Origin: Neoconidiobolus thromboides FSU 785
Taxonomy: Eukaryota > Fungi > Entomophthoromycota
Length of the DNA stretch: 49,978 bases
Direction: 5' to 3'
Assembly: GCA_025603075.1 (NCBI GenBank)
Contig: MU626402.1
Coordinates: forward strand, 1 to 49,978
Shown here: piece after piece, positions 5,065 to 47,030 of the stretch
Position numbering within the stretch: position 1 is the stretch's first letter
Layout of the letters: each line of letters opens with the position of its first letter
Translations under genes and position numbers: made by a program
The notes under the pieces: generated by a model
What the model was told of the DNA's origin: nothing
Seen by the model: the letters and a program-made list of their open reading frames with translations, nothing else
Database searches by the model: none

Positions 5065-6896
5065 GGAATGAGATTTAAAAGGATAAGTTTTTGTAAAAGA
5101 TAGCTTTTACAAAAGAAAGTAATATAGTTATTGAATAAAAGGAGTTAGGGAAGAGGATTAATTTAAGGAGATTGAAAAAATCTTGATTTGTAGAACAGTC
5201 ACCAGCCCAAAATTAGTTGCAAATTTAAATTTAAAACCAGTTTAAAATTGGAGAAAATTACTAGAAAATAGGAATTTGGAGAAAATAAAGTTTATAAGCC
5301 AAAGTTGATAAAAAAAACAACAAGTAAACTTCAATTATAATCTATTTAATTAGTAAAATATAGTTAAACTAAAGTTAATAACTAGATTATATGAGTTGTT
5401 TTAACTGAAAGATATTGATCTTAATAACAAGATTATCCAAATAAGGTGTTTACAGAATGATTATTTAGCGGTTATAATTTATTACTTTTACCTTAAAATA
5501 GAGTCAAATTTTAAAAAATAGTTGACATAAATAAATTAAAAGGGATAACTATGTTTATTTAAAACTATGTACTTAACTATACACTCTAAATTGACTTCTA
5601 AAGGTAAGCTAATAATAATCGTGCATTATTAAACTATTGTACTTTGCCTATTAATTAACTATAAACTATAAACTATAACACATAAAGCTCAATGAGAAGA
5701 ACAATTTATGAATATTATTGGATAATTTGAATGTTGTTGCTATTTCAAAGTTTTAAGCCATCCGTTTAAGCTATTTATGTGCCCCTTAACCCCACCTTGA
5801 CAAATGCTTTAATTAATTGTATACTTTTAATTTGTTTATATTGGCCGAAACTTTAAGTGTCATAAAATATCATAACTTATTGGCTAAAAACATTAAGCTT
5901 CACAGCTGAAAGATTTGAATTAGTAAAATAAAAACCTTAAATTTTAGTAATTATCATTTTTGCACATAGTAAGAGACATTCTATGTTCTGTTATTTTATT
6001 ATAAAGATAATTTCAATCCTTAATTACATTAGAAGTTCATGAGTAATAAATAAATTTTAAAACTTATCAAAAAAGAGGCTGTTATGATTAATCCATTGGA
6101 TCACATGAAAAGTTAACTACTTAAATATACTTTATTAATTGCACATATTAATTATTTTCCACCTTAAATTTACATTTTGAGAAACTATGGCCTAGAATAT
6201 TTAAAGATTGTAGCTTAAATTAAAGAATTTTTTAGAAAAATTGTTTATAAAATACTTAAAGTATTTTAATACTATACTATTATGTAAAGTTACTTTTAAA
6301 ACAATATCTTATCACAATGATTATTTATAAAATAATTAAAGTACATTAAAAGATAAGGTCAAGCTCAATTAGTTTAAAATTAAGAGAGTTTTAAAACATT
6401 TGAGTAAATGTGATCTCAAAACTCCAAATTAGATTTAATTTTACAAAATTTTAAAATCACTTATTAAAAATTAATAAAAAACAAGTAAAAATGTAGTAAA
6501 AATATAAGCTTATTATAAATTGAGACTTACTTATCTATAATCGGGGCAGAGTAATATGATCTCAATTAAACTTTTGCTTAGCTATGTTTACCAGTTATAA
6601 GTGATCTATAATGCTAAGGAATTTAATTTAGATTGTTAGTCAAAAAAAGCTTTATAGTCTTTAAATATTTAAATATTTTTAAATTTTACCTTAAAAGTAC
6701 ACTGATGGTTACCTTAATAACATAGCTTCAAACTAACCTTTAGAATTTGCATATTTAAAAATTAAGGTACTTTTTTGCTTTTTAAATTTAGCCTAAGGTA
6801 AAGCTAACTTCAAAATCAAACATTATTTATTCTTCGAGTAATTATTAATAAACTTTGATAAAAAGCTTAAGGTTTGATTTTACAATTAACAACAAG

Positions 6897-9227
6897 ATGG
6901 CCACATTAAACGGGAAAGGATATAGTAACTTACTTGATAGTCTAATGATAGAAAAAAGGAACAATAACAACAAAAAGACTGACATGTGGTGTGATATAAA
7001 GAATAATAGAATGCTTCTTCCAGTTAAAGAGCGTCAACCAGCTATTGGATTAATAAACAGAGAGATAAATGTCGAAAAGTCAAGCTTAAGCCCTAGTCTA
7101 AGTTCACATGTTCCTGAACAAATAAACCTGGACGTGTTAAAGAAAGAGCTAAATGAATGGAACTTATTACCCTTAAAAAAGGAAAAAGAACAAAAGGAGC
7201 AAATCAGTGACTACAAAGTCTATAAATTATTAGGTAAAGGTGGTTTCGCAAAGGTATATTATGGAATAAATAGAAAAGAGGGCAAAAAATTGGCGATAAA
7301 AGTATTGAAGAAAAAGGAAGTAAATAAAAACGATAGTGCTAAATTGAGAGTCAAAAAAGAGATTAAAATTCAAAATTTTCTAAAACATAAGAATATTTTA
7401 AAGATATTCACTTTTTTTGAAGATAAACAAAATATATATTTGACTTTAGAGCTATGCCCTTATGGAGATATGCTTCAATATTTGAAAAGCAAAAGACCAA
7501 ATTTAATATTAGAAGAAGAAGTGCGAATGATATTGGATCAAGTGGTAGATGCTTTAATTTATTTGCATTCTTTTAATATTTTACACCGAGACTTGAAACT
7601 ATCTAATTTGTTAATTTATGATCAAAGTAAAAAATAAGTATAAGCATTTTAAAAAGCATTAAACGTTATTTTAGGCACTATTAAACTAAGTGATTTCGGT
7701 TTGGCTACTCAAATCCAAGAAGATATTGGAGAGCAGAAGACTTTATGTGGAACTCTAAATTATATATCTCCAGAAATTATCCACCGTAAGCCTTACAATT
7801 TGCAATCTGATCTATGGTCACTTGGATGTTTGACCTATACTTTATTAACCGGAAAAGCACCATTTGAGGGTACCAATATCAAAGAAACTATCAAGAAAGT
7901 AAGTAATGTAGAGTACAATTTACCAGAGGGGATATCATTAGAAGCTGTTCAATTAATCCAATCTTTGTTAAGATTTGAGCCTAGAAAACGAATTCAATTG
8001 AAAGATTTATTGATGTTACCCTTTTTCCATAAAAATAGATTAAGATTAAACCTAGATTTATTATACTTGAAAGATAATACTAAAGAAGAAAAGCAATCCA
8101 ACTCGATAACTGATATAGAACTAAATAACCATATTTACAATAAAGATATCAATATCAATAATAATAATAATAATAATATCATTAGCATTGACAACCAAAA
8201 TCAAAAAAACTACTTTACCGTTAATAATACAAATAATGGTAAAATAATAATATTATTATAAAGTATAATTTTAATTTTAAGTTTAGATTTTTCAAATGAA
8301 CTTATTGGATATAAGTTTAATACACTATATTTACCTTCAAATGAAAAAAGGATGGATGGTTTTGTAATTGAATTACAAGAAGATGGGATACTAAAATTAA
8401 CAAATACTTTCGAAGAATACTTTATAACAATATCATCATCTGGAGAGGTTATTAAAATAATGAATCAGCAATTCCATCAAAGTAAAGCTTATTCTTTGAA
8501 AGATTTGCCCAAAAAATATCACAACTATTACAAATATGCAAGTAAATGGATAAATTTATTAAAAAGTAAAACGGTAAAATTTAGTTATAAAGAGGAAGAA
8601 AACATATTTCAATGGATGTTAAGTGATATGGATTTTGAATTTGAATATTCACGCTCTATAAAGTTGAATTTAAATCAAAGGAAACAGTTGGTTACTATTA
8701 CTTCAATTCAAAAGCATAATTGCTTTGAAAAGTTAGAATTGAATCTAAACCATGATATGTTGGATTTACCTAAGGAATTTCATGCTTGTTATAAACTGTT
8801 TATAGACTTTAATAAGAAAGCCAAGCTTTTAAATGAATACATCACTTCCCATATGGAACATTACAAATACTCATTACCTTATAAATTTAATTCACACCAT
8901 TTATCAAAGTTGAATAAAAATAATGCAAGCAAAGATTCAGAAACAATAAACAATAAAACCGATACACAAATAAAGTCTTCTATTAGCCATGAAGGATCAA
9001 ATGCTAAAGTTAAGTATTTAAAGAATGTTGGATGGTATATACAATTAGACCAATTTCATCAAAGGTTACTGTTTATGGATGGAGTTCAAATCTTGTTATC
9101 TGATTCTGGTATTCAATATTTTAAAGAAGACAAACTAATTAAAAAGTTTGACAAAAAAGAATTTTTAGATAGCGAAATTCATTATCGTTTGAAATTGTTT
9201 ACTGCTTTTATAAAAGATTTTTCTTAA
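6897..9227 (+). CDS. PLK4: Polo-like kinase 4 (SAK/PLK4): kinase domain, cryptic polo box PB1-PB2 and PB3; introns 7627-7674 and 8239-8286
   Basis: LGKGGFAKVY, HRDLKLSNLL, spliced IKLSDFGLATQ..TLCGTLNYISPEI; C-terminal YSLKDLPKKYHNYYKYASKWINLLKSKT and YLKNVGWY...FMDGVQ resemble the metazoan PLK4 PB1/2 and PB3 motifs as I recall them. Both 48-nt GT-AG introns restore the frame. Confidence 0.85.
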
Positions 9228-9561
9228 CAAATCTACTTTCATTTCTATTTTTATCAACTTATCGTGGCAATTGTTCTTCCTTTAAGCTTACCTTTGAGTA
9301 AGAAGTGTATTATATTTAATAATAAAGTATATAATGTTTTCCAAAAAACGTAGTTCATAATATTGATAGATTATAAAAAATTATACTAGTATTTTTGTTG
9401 ACTATCTAAATATTTATTAGTTCTGCTTTAAATTCATCAACTAATGATAACAACACTAAATATTAAGTGGAAATTAAACTATTTTATTAGCAAAATAAAA
9501 GACAACCCTTTTCAATAGTTAATAAAAGCTTAAGCTACTCAGATTAACTTTAATACAATAT

Positions 9562-37042: not shown

Positions 37043-38184
37043 GAAGATGTATGAGTTTAAGATTTCAAAAGACAGATATCAATGAATGATTATATATACT
37101 AATTTAAGGACAGTTAGGAAAATAATTCTCAAGTTTCAAAAAAAGTTACTTTAAATGAAACTAGGAAAAATAAAAACATTCAAATTTTTTAAATAATTTT
37201 ATAGTTAATAACCAGCCTACTTTATTTTTTTCTGCCACTTTATGCTCTTCGTTATTATTGTTTAATTTTCTCCAGTTTTCTCTGACTTATTTTAAGTTAA
37301 CGTGTCTTTTTTCATTGTTTATGAAATTTTATAGGACTTTATTTTTTTGGCTAACTTTATTTTGTTGATACATTGTATGATGATTTAATAGACAAAATGC
37401 CTAAGTAAAGGTGAAAGGTTTTAATAGATAAAAAATAATAGTATATAATGTAACTAAAAGTTATTTTTTTAATTACTATTACGTTTTAGCCTTTAGAGAT
37501 TATTTATTAATAAATTGTCTGACAATATTAATATTCGATAATTTAGTTTCAGCATCAAAATAATGTTATCACATAAAAATTATAATCTAAATATAGAAAT
37601 TCGAAACCTAGGATAATTATATTCATTATTGTTCCATTTAATGATTGTTATCTTTACATAAAAAAACATCTCAATGATAGAACTGTGCTAAAGTTTGATA
37701 AAATAATTGCTTTTTAAGCTTATATAAACATTCTTTCTACCTTTTTAGCAGAATTTAGTAATATTCTTATTTTTTTAATACTGTTATTATTATATACAAT
37801 AAAAAAAATTAAAAAATACTAGAACATTAGATGTGATTACTAATCCTAAATAAAGGTGAAGCATAACAACACAAAATTGAAAATAAATCGGCCTATTATT
37901 TTGCTTCATGCTGCAACATTAAATGAATTTTTAAATTTTCATGAAGGGGTAAAATAATATTTAATGATTTAAGTTCAAAATGAGCCAATAACTTTGAAAC
38001 TAATACTAATTTCAAGAACTATTAATAAGCTAAAGGGATTGATTTGAAAGCAATAACAAAAATATATACAAAACATACATAAAGAATACACAGTAATTAA
38101 TAGAACCGAAAAGATATAAATACCAAGAAAAAGTTGAGAAAACTAATATTAAAAATAATTTAATTGTTAAACTTAGATCAAAAA

Positions 38185-38940
38185 ATGGCCGTTATTAATA
38201 AACCAAAAGTTTTTATTGTATTTTACTCCACTTACTCTCATGTATACAAATTAGCTCAAGCTATTAAAGAAGGTGCAGAAAAGGAAGGAAAGGTAGAAGT
38301 ATCTATTTATCAAATCCCCGAAACTTTATCTGAAGAAGTATTAAGTAAAATGGGTGCTCCTGCTAAACCAGATGTACCTGTAATTACTCCTGCCTTACTT
38401 AAGGAAGCTGATGGTATCTTATTTGGATTTCCAACTCGTTTTGGTACTGTACCAGCTCAATTAAAAGATTTTATTGATTCTTGTGGTCAATTATGGGCTA
38501 CTGGTGCTTTAAATGGTAAACTAGGTGGTATTTTCACTTCCACTCAAACTCAGCATGGTGGTCAAGAAAGTACTGCTTTCACTTTCCTTACTGTACTTAC
38601 TCATTTTGGTATGCTTTATGTACCTAATGGTTACTCTACTCCATTAATTCAAGAAGATAAAGAAGTTATTGGTGGTTCTCCATGGGGTGCTTCAGTTGTT
38701 GCTAAAAATGATGTACCATCTCCAAATGAGAAAGAAATTGAAATTGGTAGAATTCAAGGTCAGAATTTTGCTAATTATGTAGCCAAATTTAATTCATCCG
38801 TTCCCCAAGAATCTACTGTTGTAGTTGAACCAGAAGTTAAAAAAGTAGAAGCTCCTAAATCTGAAGTTAAAACTGAAAAAGTCGAAAACAAAACTAGTGG
38901 CCTCAAAAAATTATTTAAACGTTTATCTATCCTTAACTAA
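38185..38940 (+). CDS. WrbA-family flavodoxin-like NAD(P)H:quinone oxidoreductase, copy 1
   Basis: IVFYSTYSHV, ADGILFGFPTRFG, DSCGQLW..GAL.GK, QHGGQEST, GGSPWGA; ATG at 38185. Confidence 0.9.
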   Translation: MAVINKPKVFIVFYSTYSHVYKLAQAIKEGAEKEGKVEVSIYQIPETLSEEVLSKMGAPAKPDVPVITPALLKEADGILFGFPTRFGTVPAQLKDFIDSCGQLWATGALNGKLGGIFTSTQTQHGGQESTAFTFLTVLTHFGMLYVPNGYSTPLIQEDKEVIGGSPWGASVVAKNDVPSPNEKEIEIGRIQGQNFANYVAKFNSSVPQESTVVVEPEVKKVEAPKSEVKTEKVENKTSGLKKLFKRLSILN

Positions 38941-39369
38941 ACCTAGAAGGTACAATCCCGTTCCTTAATACCTTTATTTAATAAAATAATATTTCAATGC
39001 TATTCATTCAGCCTTTAATATAAATAAAACTGTTTGTTATACTTTAACTTTATAGCTAATATTAATTATGAATGTTTTTAAAACAATAGATATTATAATA
39101 ACAACTAAATATTTTAATACCCTGAAGTTTGAGGCTTTATATGCAAATATAAAAAAGGCTGATATCGACCATACTCACTATAGTTAGATTTGTTTTTTAT
39201 AAAACCCTTTTTGATTTAAATTTAAATATTCCAATGTGGCCTCAGAGCAATAATAATGGATATACATTAGAAACAATGTACATAAATAAAGCATAAAAAT
39301 CATTAAACACTTATCATTAATAATGATCAATGTATAAAAAATTTACTAGAAATTTTATTTTCAAAGACC

Positions 39370-39472
39370 ATTTGGAGGCGTATTTTTTTTGTTCAAGGAT
39401 TTTATTAATAGTCTTCCCGCTCAAATAGTGCTTAAAAATAGAAAAAGTGATAAAACTAAGAACATTCCCATT
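39370..39472 (-). mobile_element. MITE-like element copy H
   Basis: TTTGGAGGCGTATTTTTTTT...AAGAACATTCCCATTT with reverse-complement core. Confidence 0.75.
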
Positions 39473-39765
39473 TTATAAGTTTAAAGTACTAAAGAATTTT
39501 TTTATCTATTCTTCACATAAATGGTAAAGATTACTAAGATGACTATAAGATAAAAAAGTTAAAGATAGTAAAAGGTATAATAAACATTAAGATTAACTTA
39601 GTTTTTTGATCATTATTTTTGAAACTTTTGCTTACAATAGTTAAATAAACTTTAAATTTTTTGCATAAAGCTTAAAATAAATAATGAATAAAAAGTACCT
39701 ATAAATAAAAAATCTGTTACTGGAATAACTATATCTATATTCAAGATAACAATAGACTGAACAAT

Positions 39766-39872
39766 ATATAAGGATGTTTTTTTTGGTTTCATCACTTTTT
39801 CTATTTTTTGAGCGTTATTTGAGCGGAAAGATTATTACTAAAATTTTAAATGAAAAAATACATCCCCATATA
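39766..39872 (+). mobile_element. MITE-like element copy I, about 370 bp upstream of the P450
   Basis: ATATAAGGATGTTTTTTTT...AAAAAATACATCCCCATAT with family core. Confidence 0.8.
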
Positions 39873-40238
39873 TTTGATAATCACAATTAAAATTTATTAA
39901 CAAATTTCAATACTATATTCACAAAGTGTAAGATTAAAATTTCTTTTTAAGTAAAACTTTAAGCTTTAATGAAAAGATTAATTTTTATAGTAATCCCGGT
40001 TAAAAATTTTCTCCAATTTTATTACACTTCAATTTTTTTTAAAAAAACTTTAACTTTAGACCAAGGCACTTTAAAATTACCCATTAATTACCAAATTTAG
40101 CTCAAGTTAATTTACTTGGCAGAGTTAGTTAATAAATCATTAAAGTTTAAAAATCAATAGTTAAAGTAGTATAAAAAGGCTATCATACTCTTTGATTTTA
40201 GTTATTATACTTCATTAACAGAACTCCAATATTTAATC

Positions 40239-41761
40239 ATGTTCTATTACCTTTTGCTTTTTGTCTCATTGGTATCATTTATAGCTTATAAAAGATCCAA
40301 ATTATTTCAAATTCCAGAGCATTTAAAACATGTACCACAAGTATCATCCATGGACAACATATTATCTTTTATTAAAGGAGAATCATTTGCTATTCGACAT
40401 AAGAAGTTTTTTGAACCTGTTATGAAAGAAACAGAATATGCAATGATGTGGCAACAAGGGAATTGGGAATTGTTAGTATCAGATACTTTAAGTGTTAAAT
40501 ATATATTAAATAATACAGATGTATTTTTAAAGAAGAAGGAGGAAGCATTTACAAAAGATCAATTGGGTTATAAACTTTTTGGTAGTTCTAATATTGTAAA
40601 TAACGATACTTTGGAGTGGAAACGTCATCGTCGTATTATTAATCCAGCTTTTAAAAAATCTTGGTCAACTGAGTTATTTGGTGATTGCACTAATGAATTC
40701 ATTAATATTATTGAAAAGAAGGGTGGTCAACCAGTTGAAATACGTACCCTTCTCCAACATCTTGCATTAGATATATTAGGAAAAGGTTTATTTAGTTTTG
40801 ATTTTGAAGCAGTTAAAAATGGTGATAAAAGTGAAATGTTATTTACTTATAATGAGATAATGAAAGGTTTATTTAATCCTATTTATTTCTTATTTCCAAA
40901 ATTAGAAACAATAATACCATCTCGTCAATATTATCATCTTAAAAATGAAGAGTTTCGTTCTTTTTTAATTGATATTATTACACTTCGTAAAAAAGAGATT
41001 GAAAATGGAGATGCTAAAGAGGATTTACTTACTTTAATGCTCAAAAATTCATTGGAATCTAAGGAAGATTGCTTAACTAATGAAGAAGTTGTAAACAATT
41101 TAGCTTCTTTTTTTTTAGCTGGCCATGATACTACCACCAATGCACTTACATCAGCTGTTTATTTTTTAGCAAAGTATCCACAAATTCAACAAAAAGTTCG
41201 TAATGAAATTATTCATGTTTTAGGTGCTAATGAAAATACTATTCCATCTCATGAAAAACAAAAACAGTTGATTTATCTAAATTGTTTTATTAAAGAAACA
41301 ATGAGATTCATTCCAACAGTTAGCTTATTAAAACGTTATTGTATTCAAGATCAAGTTTTACCTAACAATTTACTTGTTAAAAAAGACTCTTTTGTTTATT
41401 GTTATCTTTGGGGATTACATCACAATTCAAAGAATTTTCCAAATCCAGATCAATTTGATCCAGATCGATTTTTAGATCCTTATGGTGAGCAATCTAGTTC
41501 TTGGATGCCATTTAGTGGCGGGTCTAGATTATGTAATGTTACTATATTTTTGTTAATTTTTATTAATAATTTTGTTTAGGTGTTGGTATGAATTTTTCAT
41601 TGATTGAACAAAGAATTGTACTTTGTTTATTATTACAAAAATTCCAAATTCAGTTAGGTCCGAGATCAAAAAATTGGGAATCTCCTTTACTTTCTGATAC
41701 TGGCTTTATTCATATAAAAGATTTAGATATCCAATTTATTGATATAACTAATTGTGTTTAA
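40239..41761 (+). CDS. Cytochrome P450 (resembles zygomycete CYP509-type), one intron 41533-41579
   Basis: N-terminal TM, WKRHRR (C-helix), FFLAGHDTT (I-helix), KETMR (ExxR), FDPDRF, spliced heme motif FSGGSRLCVGMNFS. Confidence 0.92.
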
Positions 41762-41797
41762 GATTAATATAATAAAAATACTGTTTGAAAAAGCTTG

Positions 41798-41840
41798 TTT
41801 TTTATTTTTTATTTTTTATTTTTTATTTTTTATTTTTTTT
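41798..41840. repeat. (TTTTTTA)n microsatellite in P450 3' region
   Basis: About six tandem T-run/A units. Confidence 0.7.
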
Positions 41841-42103
41841 GTTTACTAAATATATATAACTTACTTTATAGTAACAATAATAATAATACAATCTATGTAA
41901 TATTTGTTTAAATAATATTAAATTTTAATAAATCGATTTTTTTATTTTTTTATTTTATTTTTAAAAAAAAACTATTGCTTTTAAAAGCAGAAAATATACA
42001 TATTTGAATAATAAGTAAAAAACATACCTTAATAAGAAATATTACTTATTATATTATTAATTATTATCAATTCAATTTATTAAGTATTTAAATACAAATT
42101 ATA

Positions 42104-42207
42104 ATATGGAGTATTTTTTTTTATTTCATTACTTTTTCCATTTTTTAAGTGCTATTTGAGCTAAAAGATTGTAAAATTTTTAAAAAAAGTACACTCACTC
42201 TCATATA
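42104..42207 (+). mobile_element. MITE-like element copy J
   Basis: ATATGGAGTATTTTTTT..TTTCATTACTTTTTCCATTTTTTAAGTGCTATTTGAG...CTCTCATAT. Confidence 0.7.
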
Positions 42208-42387
42208 TTTAAATTAAATTTAAAACTAAGTTCCAATTTGAGTAATAAAGTAATACTATAAAAGAAGATGAACTAAACTATGTTTAACTTAAAGATATTT
42301 CGATTTAATAATAAAAATAAAAGCTAGAAAAGTATAGGAACAATTTTTAAAAGAAATGAGCCACGTACATTAAAACATGCATAAAAA

Positions 42388-42478
42388 GTAAGTGTTTTTA
42401 ATTTTATTATTCTTTTATTTTTCAAATCTTATTTAAATGGAAAAATTGTTAATGATATTTAAAAAATATATACATCTT
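42388..42478 (+). mobile_element. Highly degenerate MITE-like copy K
   Basis: CTTATTTAAATGGAAAAATTGTTAATGATATTTAAAAAATATATACATC retains the core and right end. Confidence 0.45.
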
Positions 42479-42621
42479 TAAATATTTGTTAAATTTAATA
42501 TTAATATTTTTAATCATACATAATATTAAAAATTAGATCTTTTAATAAATTAATATTAAATTTTATTTTTCTAAAATTTAATAATAATATCATAAAAAAT
42601 ATCTAATAATAAAATATTATT

Positions 42622-42727
42622 ATACGGGGATGTATTTTCGTGTTTAAGAATTTTATTAACAATTTTTCCGCTTAAATAGTGCTTAAAAATGGAAAAAATA
42701 ATGAAGTCAAAAAAAACACTCCCATAT
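42622..42727 (-). mobile_element. MITE-like element copy L
   Basis: ATACGGGGATGTATTTT...AAAAAAAACACTCCCATAT with reverse-complement core. Confidence 0.8.
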
Positions 42728-42734
42728 TTAGTAC

Positions 42735-42810
42735 AGAATTTACTAAAAAGCTTTCTGCTAAATAGCATTTAAAAAACAAAAGTGATAAAACCTAAAAATA
42801 CATTCTTATA
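42735..42810 (-). mobile_element. Partial MITE-like copy M, tandem to L
   Basis: GAATTTACTAAAAAGCTTTCTGCTAAATAGCATTTAAAAAACAAAAGTGATAAAACCTAAAAATACATTCTTATA. Confidence 0.6.
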
Positions 42811-43205
42811 TGGATTTTATTTATCTGTATTTTATAATATCTAATATTTAATAAAAAAATATAAAAAATATATATGAAATATATATATATATATAAAATA
42901 TATATTAATGGTATATTTAAATAAAATAATATAAAAAATAAATAGTACATATAAAATGATTTTAATGAAAAAAAAAATTGATGTTTTATAATCAATAATA
43001 CTAAATTTATTTCTCTGTTTCAACTATTTCAATTATTTTATTTTTAATTTATATTAAAAAATATTTAGAGCTATATTTAAGCTTATAATTTTATTTATTT
43101 TTAATATTTGAATAAATATTAATTTAAATTATTCTTTCTATTCAAATTATTTAAACAGTAATGTTAATGATAAGGATTTATTAGGAGTATCATTGAATTT
43201 TATTA

Positions 43206-43294
43206 ATTTGGAGATGTTTTTTAGCTTCATCACTTTTTTCATTTTTCAAGCGCTATTTGAGTAGAAAGATGATTAATAAAATTCAAAAAAACAT
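43206..43294 (+). mobile_element. MITE-like copy N (right TIR shortened), left arm of a palindromic pair
   Basis: TTTGGAGATGTTTTTTAGCTTCATCAC...AAAATTCAAAAAAACATAT. Confidence 0.8.
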
Positions 43295-43401
43295 ATGGGG
43301 ATGTACTTTGTTTAAGAATTTTACTAATAATCTTTCTACTCAAATAGCGCTTGAAAAATGGAAAAAGTGATGAAGCTAAAAAACATCCTCACATCCTCAT
43401 T
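43292..43401 (-). mobile_element. MITE-like copy O, right arm of the palindromic pair
   Basis: ATATGGGGATGTACTTTG...AAAAAACATCCTCACATCCTCAT (terminal ACATCCTC duplicated). Confidence 0.8.
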
Positions 43402-44205
43402 TATTGAAACAGTTTTAGAGATTAAAAGTTTTAATTAATGTTTTAACATTAATTTTATATGTAATATTATTCAACATAAATCTATATTTATATGTTATAT
43501 AAAAAATAAAAGGATGAGAGAATTCCTAATATTAAAATAAAATATAGTGCTTATTTATTAAGAATTTAATAACATCTAATAATGTTTTTAATTTTGAGAA
43601 TCTATATAACTGTATCTTATCATTTATTTTAAAACTTTTAAAAAGTATTAGAAAAATAAAAGATAAAGATAATAACTCTATTAATAATACAATTCAAAAG
43701 TTAACAATTTTATTCTATTTTTTGTATAATTTGTTTAATCATACAAGTTTATCGTTTATATCATGCAAAAAATAATTTTTAATCATTTAACCTAAATGTC
43801 TAATTAGAGAAATCGGCTATTTTGATAATAATTATATGACTAAATTTAATGTTATTTATAAACAACTGAGATTCTAATAGTTTGTATAATAATTAATAAA
43901 ATAATAAAATAATAAAATACACTTATAGTTTGATATTGACACAATTAGTCTACAACAATAGTAAATGAACTAAATGTTTAATTATCTACTAATCTTCTAT
44001 GTTTTTCAATAAAAATAATAAAAGCGAACTCAATTCAGATTCAACTTAATACAATATGTAAGATAGGATAAAAGGGTAAACTGGGTAATTTAAATCCAAT
44101 AGATTTATAAGAATAAAATTAAACAAACAAGTATAAAAACAAATAATATTTAAAATTTATTATATTTAACCTTTTAATCACTTAACGTAAACTATTATTA
44201 TTACT

Positions 44206-44973
44206 ATGGCTACTATTGTCAAACCCAAACTCTATATTGTATTTTATAGCATGTATTTACATGTATATAAGTTAGCATTAGCAGTAAAAGAAGGAGCCGA
44301 AAGAAATGGTAATGTTGAAGTAAGCATATTTCAAATTAAAGAAACGGTCCCTGAAGAAATTTTGACTAATATAAAAGCTCCGAGTAAACCAGATGTACCT
44401 GTAATTACTCCTGCCTTACTTAAGGAAGCTGATGGTGTATTATTTGGATTTCCAACTCGTTTTGGTACTGTACCAGCTCAACTAAAAGATTTTATTGATT
44501 CTTGTGGTCAATTATGGGCTACTGGTGCTTTAAACGGTAAATTAGCTGGTACTTTTAATTCTACTCAAACCCAACATTCAGGCCAAGAAACTACAGCTTT
44601 TACTTTCCTTACAGTATTAGCTCATTTTGGTATGATTTATGTACCTAATGGCTATTCATCCCCATTGATTCATGAAGATAAAGAAATTATGGGTGGTTCG
44701 CCATGGGGTGCTTCTGTCGTTGCTGTTAATACTGGGGTACAATCACCATCTGATAAAGAATTAGAAATTGGTAAAGTTCAAGGTGAAAATTTTGCTAAAT
44801 ATTTGGCTCAATTCCATGGTTTTGGTAATCAACAAAAAATCGTAAAAGAGGAGGTACCTGTTAAAACCCAAACTGTTAATAAGGATGATAGAGTTACAAC
44901 TGAACGTGTTGAAAATCCTAAAAAAGAAACTGGTTTTAAAGGTTTCCTTAAGCGCCTATCCGTTCGTAATTAA
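44206..44973 (+). CDS. WrbA-family flavodoxin-like quinone oxidoreductase, copy 2
   Basis: IVFYSMYLHV, GFPTRFG, QHSGQETT, GGSPWGA. Confidence 0.9.
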   Translation: MATIVKPKLYIVFYSMYLHVYKLALAVKEGAERNGNVEVSIFQIKETVPEEILTNIKAPSKPDVPVITPALLKEADGVLFGFPTRFGTVPAQLKDFIDSCGQLWATGALNGKLAGTFNSTQTQHSGQETTAFTFLTVLAHFGMIYVPNGYSSPLIHEDKEIMGGSPWGASVVAVNTGVQSPSDKELEIGKVQGENFAKYLAQFHGFGNQQKIVKEEVPVKTQTVNKDDRVTTERVENPKKETGFKGFLKRLSVRN

Positions 44974-46271
44974 AATATTTATTACTCCTTTTTAAATATT
45001 ATTGAATAAATATATTTGTATTATAAATTCTTCATTTTTTGTTTTCTTTTATTAACCAAGCTGGCTTCTATAAAGGCTATAGTTATTTATATATTACTTG
45101 ATGTTTAGCTAAACAATACTTTCAAATATCAAAAAAATTATAATTGATTGTTTTCAATATTACAACTGTTGGACAGCTCTATTACGACTTTTTTTGGTCA
45201 CAATTTTTATAATAAAATTATTTGTAAAGCCAATTGTTTTTAAGGACTGTTTAAATATTCTATCATTTTAATATGAATTTTTTCTTAAATCAGGACTTAA
45301 TCAGGTCACAAAAGAGCAGCAACAGTTGTAAAGCCTCCAATTAATTTTTGATTAAAAATAATTAGTGGCAAAATATTGCATATTGACAATTTATAGGCAG
45401 AAGTTGGGAATGCTTTCTACCTATTGCCCTTTTTTATTATTTTTTAGAAATTGAATTAATGCAGATGTTTAATTTTAACATGTACTGAAAAACAGTGAAT
45501 TTTATAACTAATTATTTGTCCTATTATGCTAATTTGAGACTTATTTAGTTTTTGTTTTCAAATAAACAGTTAATTAACCAGGACTCATCCAAGCTTGAAC
45601 AGCTTATTGATTAATTGATTTTTAAATTTAAAAAATAGCAAAAAAGAACTAGTAAAATAGCATCCCAGTCAGATTATGCAAATTAAGAATAGAAATTTTG
45701 AAGATAACAATCGTTTTAAAATAAGATAAAAATAGATCATCTATAATGTTATAGAAGCTATACTCCTGCTAGAAAGAAAGGTTCTATAAGTTTATTTCAA
45801 AACAAATTTATTGTAAAATGTACTTATTGAACTCGGCAAAAAGCTGATTTTATTATATATTTATAATATATAATTTATAGTGCAAAAAAATAACTTGAGA
45901 TTGAACTTACAGTAATTAGCATAAATATTATAACTAAATCATTATAATAAATAAACAAAGAGTTTATAAACTAGAAAAAAACTTAATAGATCTTAGATTC
46001 ATTTAATTATATCATCCTTTCTTTATATTTAAGGTCCCTCGACTTTTTTATCTTCTATTAATTGAAATATTCTCAACCAAAATACAAAATTAGAAATATA
46101 CTAATGAAATAAGCATATAAATAATATTGTAGGCTAAATGGAAGAATTTTAAATCAAAAGGAAACAGGTTAATTAAAGGCTAGGTATATAAAATACAATC
46201 AAGATTATTATTTCGATGATTGTTTATCCTTTATTAACTAATTCAATAATTATTTTTATATCAATTACACT

Positions 46272-47030
46272 ATGAGTTCTATTCAAAAACCTAAATTATT
46301 GATTGTATTTTATTCGACATTTATGAATGTATATAAGTTAGCCTTAGCAATCAAAGAAGGGGCTGAAAAAGTGAATGAAATAGATGTAGAAATTTATCAA
46401 GTAAAAGAAACATTAAGTGATAGTATATTAGCTAAAAAAGGGGCGCCAGAGAAGCCAGATATTCCCATAATAACACCGGAATTACTAAAAGAAGCCGATG
46501 GTATTTTATTTGGATTTCCAGCTTGCTTTGGACTATTACCAGCTCAACTAAAAGATTTTATTGATTCTTGTGGTTCTTTATGGGCTTCGGGTGCCATGCA
46601 GGGTAAACTAGCGGGCATCTTTAATTCAACGGAATTACAACATTCAGGTCAAGAAACTACAGCTTTTACTTTTATAACAATTTTAGCACATTTTGGTATG
46701 ATCTTTGTACCTAATGGGTATTCCTGTCTTGAAATTCATGAAGACAAAGAGATTTTAGGTGGTTCGCCATGGGGTGCTTCTGTTGTTGCGAGTAAAAAAA
46801 TAAGATCACCATCAAACAAAGAAAAAGCGATTGCTAGATGTCAAGGCGAAAATTTTGCTACTTATTTAGCTAAGTTTCATGGAGCTTTAGATCCTCATAA
46901 TGAGGCTAAATCAAACCTAGAAGGTAAAATTAAAATTCATAAATTAAAAGAAGCGGAGGATATCGATGTACCTATTTCGAAACCTAAAAGTATTAAGAAA
47001 ATCTTGAAACGTTTATCAATGCAAAGTTGA
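46272..47030 (+). CDS. WrbA-family flavodoxin-like protein, copy 3 (divergent FMN-binding motifs)
   Basis: IVFYSTFMNV, GFPACFG, QHSGQETT, GGSPWGA. Confidence 0.85.
   Translation: MSSIQKPKLLIVFYSTFMNVYKLALAIKEGAEKVNEIDVEIYQVKETLSDSILAKKGAPEKPDIPIITPELLKEADGILFGFPACFGLLPAQLKDFIDSCGSLWASGAMQGKLAGIFNSTELQHSGQETTAFTFITILAHFGMIFVPNGYSCLEIHEDKEILGGSPWGASVVASKKIRSPSNKEKAIARCQGENFATYLAKFHGALDPHNEAKSNLEGKIKIHKLKEAEDIDVPISKPKSIKKILKRLSMQS

What the first reader, a model, noticed from the sequence alone, without database searches (positions are those of the whole stretch)
6897..9227. Intact PLK4/SAK centriole-duplication kinase in what looks like a non-flagellated fungus
Seen: the gene carries not only a polo-type kinase domain but also the PLK4-specific cryptic polo box (about 8310-8800, YSL.DLP.KY..YY.YAS.W..LLKSKT) and a PB3 (about 9000-9220, KNVGW..Q...F.DG.Q), all in frame. 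Established: PLK4 triggers centriole assembly through CEP152/Asl, CEP192/SPD-2 and STIL/SAS-6, and is absent from yeasts and moulds with spindle pole bodies, which keep only a Plk1/Cdc5-type kinase. Inference: if this genome is a zygomycete or entomophthoralean, PLK4 has been retained after flagellum loss, implying a relic centriole-like core (EM has shown such structures in Basidiobolus and Coemansia) or a repurposed PLK4 pathway at the SPB.
Basis: partly seen in the sequence, partly recalled or inferred. Interest (0 to 1): 0.85.

Follow-up and report, generated by a model that had tools for sequence, protein, structure and literature searches.

The report
PLK4 kinase kept by flagellum-less fungus
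A fungus with no flagella or known centrioles (Neoconidiobolus thromboides) keeps, transcribes and conserves an intact copy of PLK4, the kinase that starts centriole duplication in animals, and several other flagellum-less fungi keep it too, so its role there can now be tested.

Summary
Window 6897-9227 (+) is a three-exon gene of 744 aa, with two 48-nt GT..AG introns. One 2410-nt RNA contig confirms both splice sites exactly.

- **Kinase:** the catalytic motifs are intact, and human PLK4 is the best solved-structure match.
- **Pfam:** Plk4_PB1 misses its cutoff by 1 bit; PB2 and POLO_box give no hit. The domain is real but strongly diverged.
- **Organism:** N. thromboides FSU 785 (Entomophthorales), which has no flagellated stage.
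- **Selection:** differences from a close relative are 31 synonymous to 9 non-synonymous.
- **Relatives:** PLK4 orthologues also occur in Massospora, Entomophthora, Basidiobolus, Syncephalis, Ambispora, Calcarisporiella and apparently Protomyces.

The function is inferred, not shown. Most likely PLK4 controls duplication or assembly of the nucleus-associated microtubule organiser. A relic centriole-like core is a live rival. No paper found reports PLK4 in these fungi. Earlier notes of this scan flag possible STIL-, CPAP-, CEP135- and CCDC77-like remnants elsewhere in this genome; I did not test them.

The parts
6761..9266 (+). Transcribed region (mRNA) of the PLK4 gene
   Evidence: One RNA contig of 2410 nt in run X4 lies on 6761-7626, 7675-8237 and 8286-9266 with no mismatches.
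6897..7626 (+). Coding exon 1: N-terminal extension (residues 1-102) and kinase N-lobe up to HRDLKLSNLLIYDQ
   Evidence: ATG at 6897 and GT donor at 7627. Pfam Pkinase E 3e-34. Human PLK4 is the best PDB hit at 110.5 bits.
7627..7674 (+). Intron 1 (48 nt, GT..AG, carries an in-frame stop)
   Evidence: The joint 7626>7675 is seen in RNA contigs of four runs.
7675..8238 (+). Coding exon 2: kinase C-lobe (DFG, activation-loop Thr, SPE) and the Asn-rich linker L1
   Evidence: Pfam Pkinase E 3e-27. PDB scores: PLK4 113.4 bits against PLK1 109.9. Alignment.
8239..8286 (+). Intron 2 (48 nt, GT..AG)
   Evidence: The joint 8237/8238>8286/8287 is seen in RNA contigs of four runs.
8287..9227 (+). Coding exon 3: end of L1, cryptic polo box (PB1+PB2), linker L2, PB3 and the stop codon
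7203..8039 (+). Protein kinase domain (residues 103-365, interrupted by intron 1)
   Evidence: Envelope from a kinase-domain HMM search. The motifs GKGGFAKV, AIK, HRDLKLSN, DFG, TLCGT and SPE are present.
8340..8570 (+). Polo box 1 of the cryptic polo box (residues 450-526): six strands plus a helix
8580..8852 (+). Polo box 2 of the cryptic polo box (residues 530-620): six strands plus a long helix; strongly diverged
   Evidence: AF2 pLDDT 65-82. It superposes together with PB1 on human and Drosophila PLK4 CPB. No Pfam Plk4_PB2 hit. Near-invariant family residues are replaced.
8853..9005 (+). Linker L2 (residues 621-671), partly disordered
   Evidence: pLDDT below 50 at piece residues 218-237.
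9006..9221 (+). Polo box 3 (residues 672-743)

Best explanation
**Identity (about 0.93 on its own).** This is a genuine, expressed, selectively maintained orthologue of polo-like kinase 4 (PLK4/SAK) in Neoconidiobolus thromboides, a fungus with no flagellated stage and no described centriole. It has an active-looking Ser/Thr kinase domain, a two-box cryptic polo box (PB1-PB2) and a third polo box (PB3).

**Mechanism (inferred).** By analogy with animal PLK4, the cryptic polo box would dimerise the kinase and dock it to a scaffold at the nucleus-associated microtubule-organising centre (spindle pole body or nucleus-associated organelle). PB3 would bind a helical coiled-coil partner through its retained hydrophobic cleft and so activate the kinase. 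The kinase would then phosphorylate organiser components to license duplication or assembly of the organiser once per nuclear cycle.

**Why it was kept.** I think it most likely survived for a centriole-independent role of this kind. It lacks the animal DSGxxT degron, so its turnover must be controlled differently.
For: **Shown here**
- **Gene model and transcription:** confirmed by spliced RNA contigs.
- **Purifying selection:** 31 synonymous against 9 non-synonymous differences from a close relative's transcripts, over 412 synonymous and 1820 non-synonymous sites, so dN/dS is about 0.07.
- **Catalytic motifs:** all present, with PLK4-type signatures HRDLKLSN and NYISPE, where PLK1/Cdc5 have ...LGN and NYIAPE.
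- **PDB sequence ranking:** PLK4 scores 110.5 + 113.4 bits for the two kinase pieces. PLK2 scores 92 + 99. PLK1 scores under 79 + 110.
- **C-terminal sequence hits:** the only PDB sequence matches with E below 0.1 are PLK4 CPB and PB3 chains, in the right order.
- **Independent profile:** a profile of six PLK4 C-termini built without the window scores 52.5 bits on residues 460-636 and 28.4 bits on residues 639-743.
- **Full-length collinearity:** the protein aligns end to end with Massospora (31% over 705 aa, E 4e-88) and Ambispora (32% over 671 aa) proteins. These two proteins pass the Pfam Plk4_PB1 and Plk4_PB2 cutoffs.
- **PB3 cleft:** 9 of the 10 hydrophobic human PB3 positions that contact the STIL coiled coil (PMC4530586) stay hydrophobic.
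- **Tree:** the kinase groups with Massospora and Entomophthora (98/96), consistent with vertical descent.

**Precedent for centriole-independent PLK4 roles**
- Spindle formation in the acentriolar mouse embryo needs PLK4 (PMC3898710).
- PLK4 acts at acentriolar organisers in oocytes (PMC5674873).
- PLK4 self-assembles and promotes de novo organiser formation (PMC6398482).
Against: - **No functional data.** Localisation, partners and substrates are unknown.
- **Diverged docking domain.** Pfam thresholds are not met. Near-invariant family residues in the first strand of PB2 (consensus AKCxLMEN) read NIFQWMLS here, and a Cys that is invariant in the 42 relatives aligned is Phe. Docking partners may therefore differ or have been lost.
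- **Kinase tree not decisive alone.** An AU test does not reject placing the window with PLK1 (p 0.31), nor PLK4 monophyly (p 0.38).
- **Model not independent of the family.** The AF2 model was built with an alignment of PLK4 relatives.
- **Partner genes untested.** I could not search the genome for SAS-6, STIL, Cep152 or Cep192.
Confidence: 0.55

Rival explanations
1. Relic centriole pathway. The fungus still builds a reduced centriole-like core inside its nucleus-associated organelle, such as a ring of singlet microtubules or a cartwheel remnant. PLK4 would trigger its assembly through surviving STIL/Ana2-, SAS-6- or CPAP-like partners, as in animals and chytrids.
For: - The PB3 hydrophobic cleft that binds the STIL coiled coil is largely kept.
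- The whole three-box architecture is kept under purifying selection.
- Basidiobolus ranarum has a very canonical PLK4 (PB1 63.7 bits, PB2 89.5 bits). From my own knowledge, not checked here, McKerracher and Heath 1985 reported microtubule-like elements in its nucleus-associated organelle.
- Coemansia has a ring of nine microtubules in its spindle pole body (PMC6070874).
- Unverified notes of this scan report STIL-N-like, CPAP G-box-like, CEP135-like and CCDC77-like genes in this genome.
Against: - No ultrastructure for Neoconidiobolus was found.
- No SAS-6 note exists for this genome.
- The earlier STIL-like note says the coiled coil and STAN parts are missing.
- The cryptic polo box is much more diverged here than in Basidiobolus.
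- PLK4 is also kept by Glomeromycotina, and apparently by Protomyces; I know of no centriole-like core described in either.
Confidence: 0.25
2. PLK4 was kept for a function unrelated to the microtubule-organising centre, for example another cell-cycle, septation or stress-signalling role. The polo boxes would then serve only for dimerisation and new targeting.
For: - The docking surface is strongly diverged and the animal degron is absent.
- Distribution among non-flagellated fungi is patchy.
Against: - Every characterised PLK4 or ZYG-1 acts at centrioles or acentriolar organisers (PMC4554922, PMC3898710, PMC5674873).
- Retention of all three polo boxes in the same order argues for conserved interactions.
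Confidence: 0.12
3. The gene is a functionless leftover on its way to being lost.
For: - Pfam scores for the polo boxes are below threshold.
- Six non-synonymous differences cluster at residues 458-490 in PB1.
Against: - The reading frame is intact and the transcript is correctly spliced, at substantial depth in four RNA runs.
- dN/dS is about 0.07.
- All catalytic residues are kept.
- Orthologues are kept in Massospora and Entomophthora.
Confidence: 0.05
4. It is not PLK4 but a diverged Cdc5/PLK1 paralogue or another kinase that only resembles it, or it comes from contaminating animal DNA.
For: - The AU test on the kinase domain alone does not reject a position next to PLK1 (p 0.31).
- Pfam thresholds are not met.
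Against: - The PLK1/PLK3/Cdc5 clade (100/100) excludes it in both free trees.
- The two-box unit superposes on PLK4 CPB, while PLK1 polo-box domains match a single box.
- It has a third polo box, which PLK1 lacks.
- The gene sits in a 50-kb fungal scaffold of uniform 24-39% G+C among fungal genes. Its nearest relatives are Entomophthorales proteins on contigs of 254-477 kb.
Confidence: 0.03

Closest known systems
Animal PLK4/SAK (human PLK4, Drosophila SAK)
   Same: - Same domain order: kinase, L1, PB1-PB2 cryptic polo box, L2, PB3.
- PLK4-type kinase signatures.
- The hydrophobic PB3 cleft is kept.
   Different: - Only 16-19% identity in the CPB.
- No DSGxxT degron after the kinase domain, which all 8 animal sequences checked have.
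- A short Asn-rich L1 linker and an N-terminal extension of about 100 residues.
- Conserved residues of the first PB2 strand are replaced.
- The host has no known centriole.
PLK4 of zoosporic fungi and aphelids (Batrachochytrium, Spizellomyces, Sorochytrium, Paraphysoderma, Amoeboaphelidium)
   Same: - Same architecture.
- The highest kinase-domain identity to the window is 49%, to Paraphysoderma.
- They also lack the animal degron.
   Different: - These organisms build centrioles and flagella.
- Their polo boxes pass Pfam thresholds easily.
PLK4-like proteins of other non-flagellated fungi: Massospora cicadina, Entomophthora muscae, Basidiobolus ranarum, Syncephalis plumigaleata, Ambispora, Calcarisporiella thermophila, Protomyces lactucae-debilis
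   Same: - The closest relatives are Massospora and Entomophthora (98/96 clade). With the window they share loss of the Pro in GTPNY.
- Kinase plus polo boxes in the full-length members, and none has a flagellated stage. Syncephalis is known only as a 299-aa fragment without the kinase, and only PB1 passes Pfam in Protomyces.
   Different: - Basidiobolus, Ambispora and Calcarisporiella are far more canonical (PB1 58-66 bits, PB2 72-90 bits) than the window.
- The window (PB1 25 bits, no PB2 hit) and Entomophthora (PB1 17, PB2 22 bits) fall below the Pfam cutoffs; Massospora just passes (PB1 27, PB2 35 bits).
C. elegans ZYG-1
   Different: ZYG-1 acts in centriole assembly by recruiting SAS-5/SAS-6 (PMC11169420). 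No centriole is known in the window's host.
PLK1 / Cdc5 / Plo1
   Same: A polo-family kinase domain, with the C-lobe scoring almost as well as PLK4 (109.9 against 113.4 bits). Individual polo boxes share the fold.
   Different: - PLK1 has two polo boxes forming a phosphopeptide clamp, and only about 80 residues superpose.
- Its kinase signatures are LGN and IAPE.
- It forms a separate clade with 100/100 support.

Membership tests
PLK4/SAK subfamily of polo-like kinases | N-terminal Ser/Thr kinase domain of the polo family, with catalytic residues intact | tested here: met
   Pfam Pkinase on both exons. The Gly-loop, AIK Lys, alpha-C Glu, HRD, DFG, activation-loop Thr and SPE are all present.
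PLK4/SAK subfamily of polo-like kinases | Kinase domain closer to PLK4 than to PLK1-3 or Aurora | tested here: inconclusive
   - PDB bit scores favour PLK4 (110.5 + 113.4) over PLK2 (92 + 99), PLK3 (86 + 105), PLK1 (under 79 + 110) and Aurora (88 + 83).
- The free trees exclude it from the PLK1/3/Cdc5 clade (100/100) and join it to Entomophthorales PLK4-like proteins (98/96).
- AU tests reject neither PLK4 monophyly (p 0.38) nor window-plus-PLK1 (p 0.31).
PLK4/SAK subfamily of polo-like kinases | Cryptic polo box: two tandem polo boxes (PB1, PB2) in the PLK4-type end-to-end arrangement | tested here: met
   - AF2 model with six strands plus a helix, twice.
- A custom PLK4 C-terminal profile scores 52.5 bits.
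- The model is a prediction, built with an alignment of relatives.
PLK4/SAK subfamily of polo-like kinases | Passes the curated Pfam models Plk4_PB1 (PF18190) and Plk4_PB2 (PF18409) | tested here: not met
   PB1 scores 25.4 bits against a cutoff of 26.4 (E 1.6e-5). PB2 gives no hit at E up to 1. Its full-length relatives Massospora and Ambispora pass both.
PLK4/SAK subfamily of polo-like kinases | Single C-terminal polo box 3 | tested here: met
   - Phmmer against mouse Sak PB3 (1mby) gives E 8e-3.
- The custom profile scores 28.4 bits.
- Pfam POLO_box gives no hit.
PLK4/SAK subfamily of polo-like kinases | PB3 hydrophobic cleft that binds the STIL/Ana2 coiled coil | tested here: inconclusive
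   Nine of 10 human contact positions remain hydrophobic and one is Gln (residue list from PMC4530586). These residues also pack the fold. Binding was not tested, and no partner has been identified.
PLK4/SAK subfamily of polo-like kinases | Phosphodegron DSGxxT after the kinase domain (SCF-betaTrCP/Slimb control) | tested here: not met
   It is absent from the window and from all 30 other fungal and aphelid sequences at that position. It is present in all 8 animal sequences. In this sampling it is therefore an animal feature rather than a family-defining one.
PLK4/SAK subfamily of polo-like kinases | Homodimerisation, docking to Cep152/Asl or Cep192/SPD-2, and a requirement for centriole or organiser duplication | not testable with these tools
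   This needs biochemistry, localisation and genetics. I could not search the genome for the partner genes.

The most novel reading that the evidence does not exclude
PLK4 retention is not an oddity of one fungus. It marks an ancestral PLK4-dependent duplication seed that survived loss of the flagellum in several terrestrial fungal lineages: Entomophthoromycotina, Zoopagomycotina, Glomeromycotina, Calcarisporiella and even Taphrinomycotina-like ascomycetes. On this reading the fungal spindle pole body evolved on top of a centriole-derived, PLK4-triggered core, and these fungi are living intermediates in which that transition can be dissected.
Probability: 0.2. Interest if true: 0.85.

Novelty: new member of a known kind. 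Interest (0 to 1): 0.62.

Why it matters
**The textbook picture.** The centriole-duplication machinery, PLK4 included, is said to have been lost in fungi together with the flagellum and to survive only in chytrids (PMC6070874, PMC6559791).

**What this finding changes.** An intact, transcribed and constrained PLK4 in a flagellum-less entomophthoralean, with orthologues in at least seven other non-flagellated fungal genera, shows that loss of PLK4 and loss of the centriole are separable.

**What becomes testable.** How the spindle pole body replaced the centriolar centrosome is a long-standing question. One can now ask directly whether PLK4 sits at the nuclear organiser of these fungi, what its polo boxes bind, and whether a centriole-like core persists.

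**A second point.** The SCF degron of animal PLK4 looks like a later addition, because no fungal or aphelid orthologue examined has it.

Tried and rejected
- **Rfam on the whole window:** no RNA family.
- **Pfam on the C-terminus:** Plk4_PB2 and POLO_box gave no hit, so Pfam alone could not settle the matter.
- **Phmmer of the exon-3 piece against 1.84 billion representatives:** only 18 hits, best E 3e-8. The window's own protein and any close Conidiobolus relative were missing. I therefore could not build a within-family alignment of close relatives.
- **Cluster look-ups:** names are hidden for window proteins, and none exist for the metagenomic hits.
- **First kinase tree:** three very long outgroup branches left it unresolved. 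I rebuilt it without them.
- **AU tests on the kinase domain:** they could not discriminate.
- **ESM Atlas search:** only generic polo-box and C5orf34 clusters.
- **AlphaFold DB clusters:** PLK4/SAK models came back, but the organism names were hidden.
- **Literature searches:** PLK4 with Conidiobolus, with Basidiobolus, and a multi-term search of PLK4 with zygomycete group names found no such paper. A search for the assembly accession also found nothing.
- **Contamination, pseudogene and PLK1 paralogue:** all considered and rejected (see the rival explanations).
- **Centriole partner genes:** I could not search this genome for SAS-6, STIL, CPAP, CEP135, Cep152, Cep192, POC1 or delta/epsilon-tubulin. 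Only unverified notes of this scan exist.
Full report
**1. What is in the sequence.** The window is very AT-rich, 17-39% G+C in 2-kb bins. ORF listing shows three same-frame open stretches between 6855 and 9227.

Reading the sequence gives an ATG at 6897. There are two candidate 48-nt introns with GT..AG ends, at 7627-7674 and 8239-8286, and a stop codon ending at 9227. Splicing them yields a 2235-nt coding sequence and a 744-residue protein.

RNA data confirm this exactly. A 2410-nt transcript contig of run X4 lies on 6761-7626, 7675-8237 and 8286-9266 without a mismatch. The same two joints appear in three further RNA runs of a closely related organism. The gene is therefore real, complete, transcribed and correctly spliced.

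**2. Which organism.** The window is the whole of NCBI scaffold MU626402.1 of assembly GCA_025603075.1.

The nearest named homologues of a window-encoded WrbA-like protein are three paralogues annotated Neoconidiobolus thromboides FSU 785, at 63-65% identity. Conidiobolus coronatus follows at 47%.

N. thromboides is an entomophthoralean. The kinase tree independently joins the window protein to those of Massospora cicadina and Entomophthora muscae. Earlier notes of this scan name the same species. That Entomophthorales have no flagellated stage is established knowledge.

**3. The kinase.**
- Pfam Pkinase matches exon 1 (E 3e-34) and exon 2 (E 3e-27).
- Against all solved structures, the N-lobe piece scores best with human PLK4 (110.5 bits). 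PLK2 scores 92, Aurora B 88 and PLK3 86, and PLK1 is below the 60 listed.
- The C-lobe piece scores 113.4 bits with PLK4 and 109.9 with PLK1.
- An alignment with fungal, animal and PLK1/Cdc5 sequences shows every catalytic element: GKGGFAKV, AIK, the alpha-C Glu, HRD, DFG, the activation-loop Thr and SPE.
- The same alignment shows the PLK4-type signatures HRDLKLSN and NYISPE, where PLK1/Cdc5 have LGN and IAPE.

In maximum-likelihood trees of the kinase domain, PLK1/PLK3/Cdc5 form a 100/100 clade that excludes the window protein. With the worst long-branch outgroups removed, the window joins Massospora plus Entomophthora at 98/96. The kinase domain alone is not decisive. AU tests reject neither a single PLK4 clade (p 0.38) nor the window placed with PLK1 (p 0.31).

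**4. The C-terminus.** This is what discriminates PLK4 from other polo kinases.

*Pfam is borderline.* Plk4_PB1 scores 25.4 bits against a cutoff of 26.4. Plk4_PB2 and POLO_box give nothing.

*Other sequence evidence points one way.*
- In a phmmer search of all PDB sequences, every match with E below 0.1 is PLK4. The cryptic-polo-box chains match piece residues 67-129. The PB3 chains match residues 241-312, in the right order.
- Phmmer against 1.84 billion representatives gives 18 hits.
- All ten that I scanned carry Plk4_PB1, and eight also hit Plk4_PB2 (seven above its cutoff). The named ones come from chytrids, an aphelid, Massospora, Ambispora and Syncephalis.
- The spliced protein aligns end to end with the Massospora and Ambispora proteins (E about 1e-88).
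- A profile built from six PLK4 C-termini without the window scores 52.5 bits on residues 460-636 and 28.4 bits on residues 639-743.

*The predicted fold agrees.* An AlphaFold2 model of the exon-3 product, made with a 43-sequence alignment, has mean pLDDT 81. It shows three units of six strands plus a helix.
- Foldseek's top eleven PDB hits are all PLK4 cryptic polo boxes, with E 1e-8 to 3e-6.
- PLK1 polo-box domains align over only about 80 residues, which is one box.
- AlphaFold DB cluster representatives named PLK4 or SAK align across all three boxes.

I conclude that the PLK4-specific architecture is present, but the sequence is unusually diverged. Several near-invariant family residues are replaced. 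The first PB2 strand has consensus AKCxLMEN and reads NIFQWMLS here. A Cys that is invariant in the 42 relatives aligned is Phe.

**5. Is it maintained?** Forty listed differences between the window and transcripts of a close relative are 31 synonymous and 9 non-synonymous. The gene has 412 synonymous and 1820 non-synonymous sites, so dN/dS is roughly 0.07. Six of the nine replacements cluster in residues 458-490 of PB1. Eighteen further differences were not listed by the tool, so this is a rough estimate.

**6. Functional surfaces.** Arquint et al. (PMC4530586) list ten hydrophobic PB3 residues of human PLK4 that contact the STIL coiled coil. Nine of the ten aligned positions stay hydrophobic in the window protein; V907 is Gln. 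This is consistent with binding a helical partner, but these residues also contribute to the fold.

The DSGxxT phosphodegron that follows the kinase domain in all eight animal PLK4s checked is absent from the window protein. It is also absent from all 30 other fungal and aphelid sequences at that position.

**7. Wider distribution.** The searches show PLK4-type proteins in other fungi that lack flagella, most of them on large genomic contigs:

| Organism | Protein | Evidence |
|---|---|---|
| Massospora cicadina | 694 aa | |
| Entomophthora muscae | 665 aa | |
| Basidiobolus ranarum | 696 aa; PB1 64 bits, PB2 90 bits | |
| Syncephalis plumigaleata | 299-aa C-terminal fragment | |
| Ambispora | 754 aa | |
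| Calcarisporiella thermophila | 779 aa | |
| Protomyces lactucae-debilis (an ascomycete) | annotated as fused to an Ariadne-type E3 ligase; PB1 34 bits | |

Eight unnamed sequences from metagenome or run assemblies are closest to the Protomyces protein. For the two I looked up, the genes lie in compact fungal contigs with shared neighbours.

Reviews state that PLK4 was lost from yeasts and kept in chytrids. They also state that centriole-biogenesis proteins are not found in fungal genomes other than chytrids (PMC6070874, PMC6559791). My searches found no paper that mentions PLK4 together with these fungi.

**8. How it most likely works.**

*Shown:* an expressed, constrained polo-family kinase with intact catalytic motifs and the PLK4-type targeting domains.

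*Inferred from animal PLK4 (PMC4554922, PMC4530586):*
- the cryptic polo box dimerises the kinase and docks it to a scaffold;
- PB3 binds a coiled-coil activator;
- the kinase then licenses duplication of the microtubule organiser.

No centriole is known here. PLK4 also has documented centriole-independent roles at acentriolar organisers (PMC3898710, PMC5674873, PMC6398482). I therefore favour a role at the nucleus-associated organiser without a true centriole.

The main rival is a surviving centriole-like core, as suggested for Coemansia (PMC6070874) and, from my own knowledge, Basidiobolus. Unverified notes of this scan report STIL-N-like, CPAP G-box-like, CEP135-like and CCDC77-like genes elsewhere in this genome. 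I could not test them, and no SAS-6 note exists.

**9. Verdict.** This is a new, diverged member of a known family in an unexpected host, and it is part of a wider, apparently unreported pattern of PLK4 retention in flagellum-less fungi. The function is open and directly testable.

Noticed in passing
P0064 (Protomyces lactucae-debilis); loci L002:4305-6530 and L003:6001-8664: An ascomycete of the Taphrinomycotina carries a PLK4-like kinase with a Plk4_PB1 hit above cutoff (34.3 bits). Eight unnamed assembly-derived proteins are its closest relatives (43-73% identity). In the two contigs examined the gene is intronless and flanked by a bacteriorhodopsin-like gene and an ABM-domain gene. PLK4-like kinases may therefore persist in some Dikarya.
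   Followed up: partly
window 8040-8100 (just after the kinase domain), and the same position in 30 fungal and aphelid PLK4 proteins: The SCF-betaTrCP/Slimb phosphodegron DSGxxT, present 15-25 residues after the kinase domain in all 8 animal PLK4s checked, is absent at that position from every fungal and aphelid PLK4 checked, zoosporic or not. It looks like an animal-lineage addition.
   Followed up: yes
window 8601-8624 (protein residues 537-544) and residue 603: The first strand of PB2 has the consensus AKCxLMEN in 42 relatives (A, C, L and N in 95-100%) but reads NIFQWMLS here. A Cys that is invariant in those relatives is Phe. The docking domain of this species is the most diverged of the family members seen.
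   Followed up: partly
window 8364-8461 (residues 458-490): Six of the nine non-synonymous differences from the related organism's transcripts cluster in the first strands of PB1. The kinase domain has one in fifteen listed differences.
   Followed up: partly
window 8019-8080: One low-depth RNA contig of run X8 skips 60 nt (an in-frame deletion of 20 residues, non-canonical ends) at the end of the kinase domain. This is probably an allele or an assembly artefact rather than splicing.
   Followed up: no
window 7752-7766 (GTLNY) and the Massospora and Entomophthora proteins: The Pro of the polo-kinase GTPNY motif is replaced in the window (Leu), Massospora (Ile) and Entomophthora (Leu), but not in Basidiobolus or any other PLK4 aligned. 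It is a shared derived change of the Entomophthorales copies.
   Followed up: partly
window 38164-47030: There are three tandem WrbA-type flavoprotein genes (60-69% identical to each other), and further paralogues elsewhere in the genome. I used them here only to identify the organism.
   Followed up: partly
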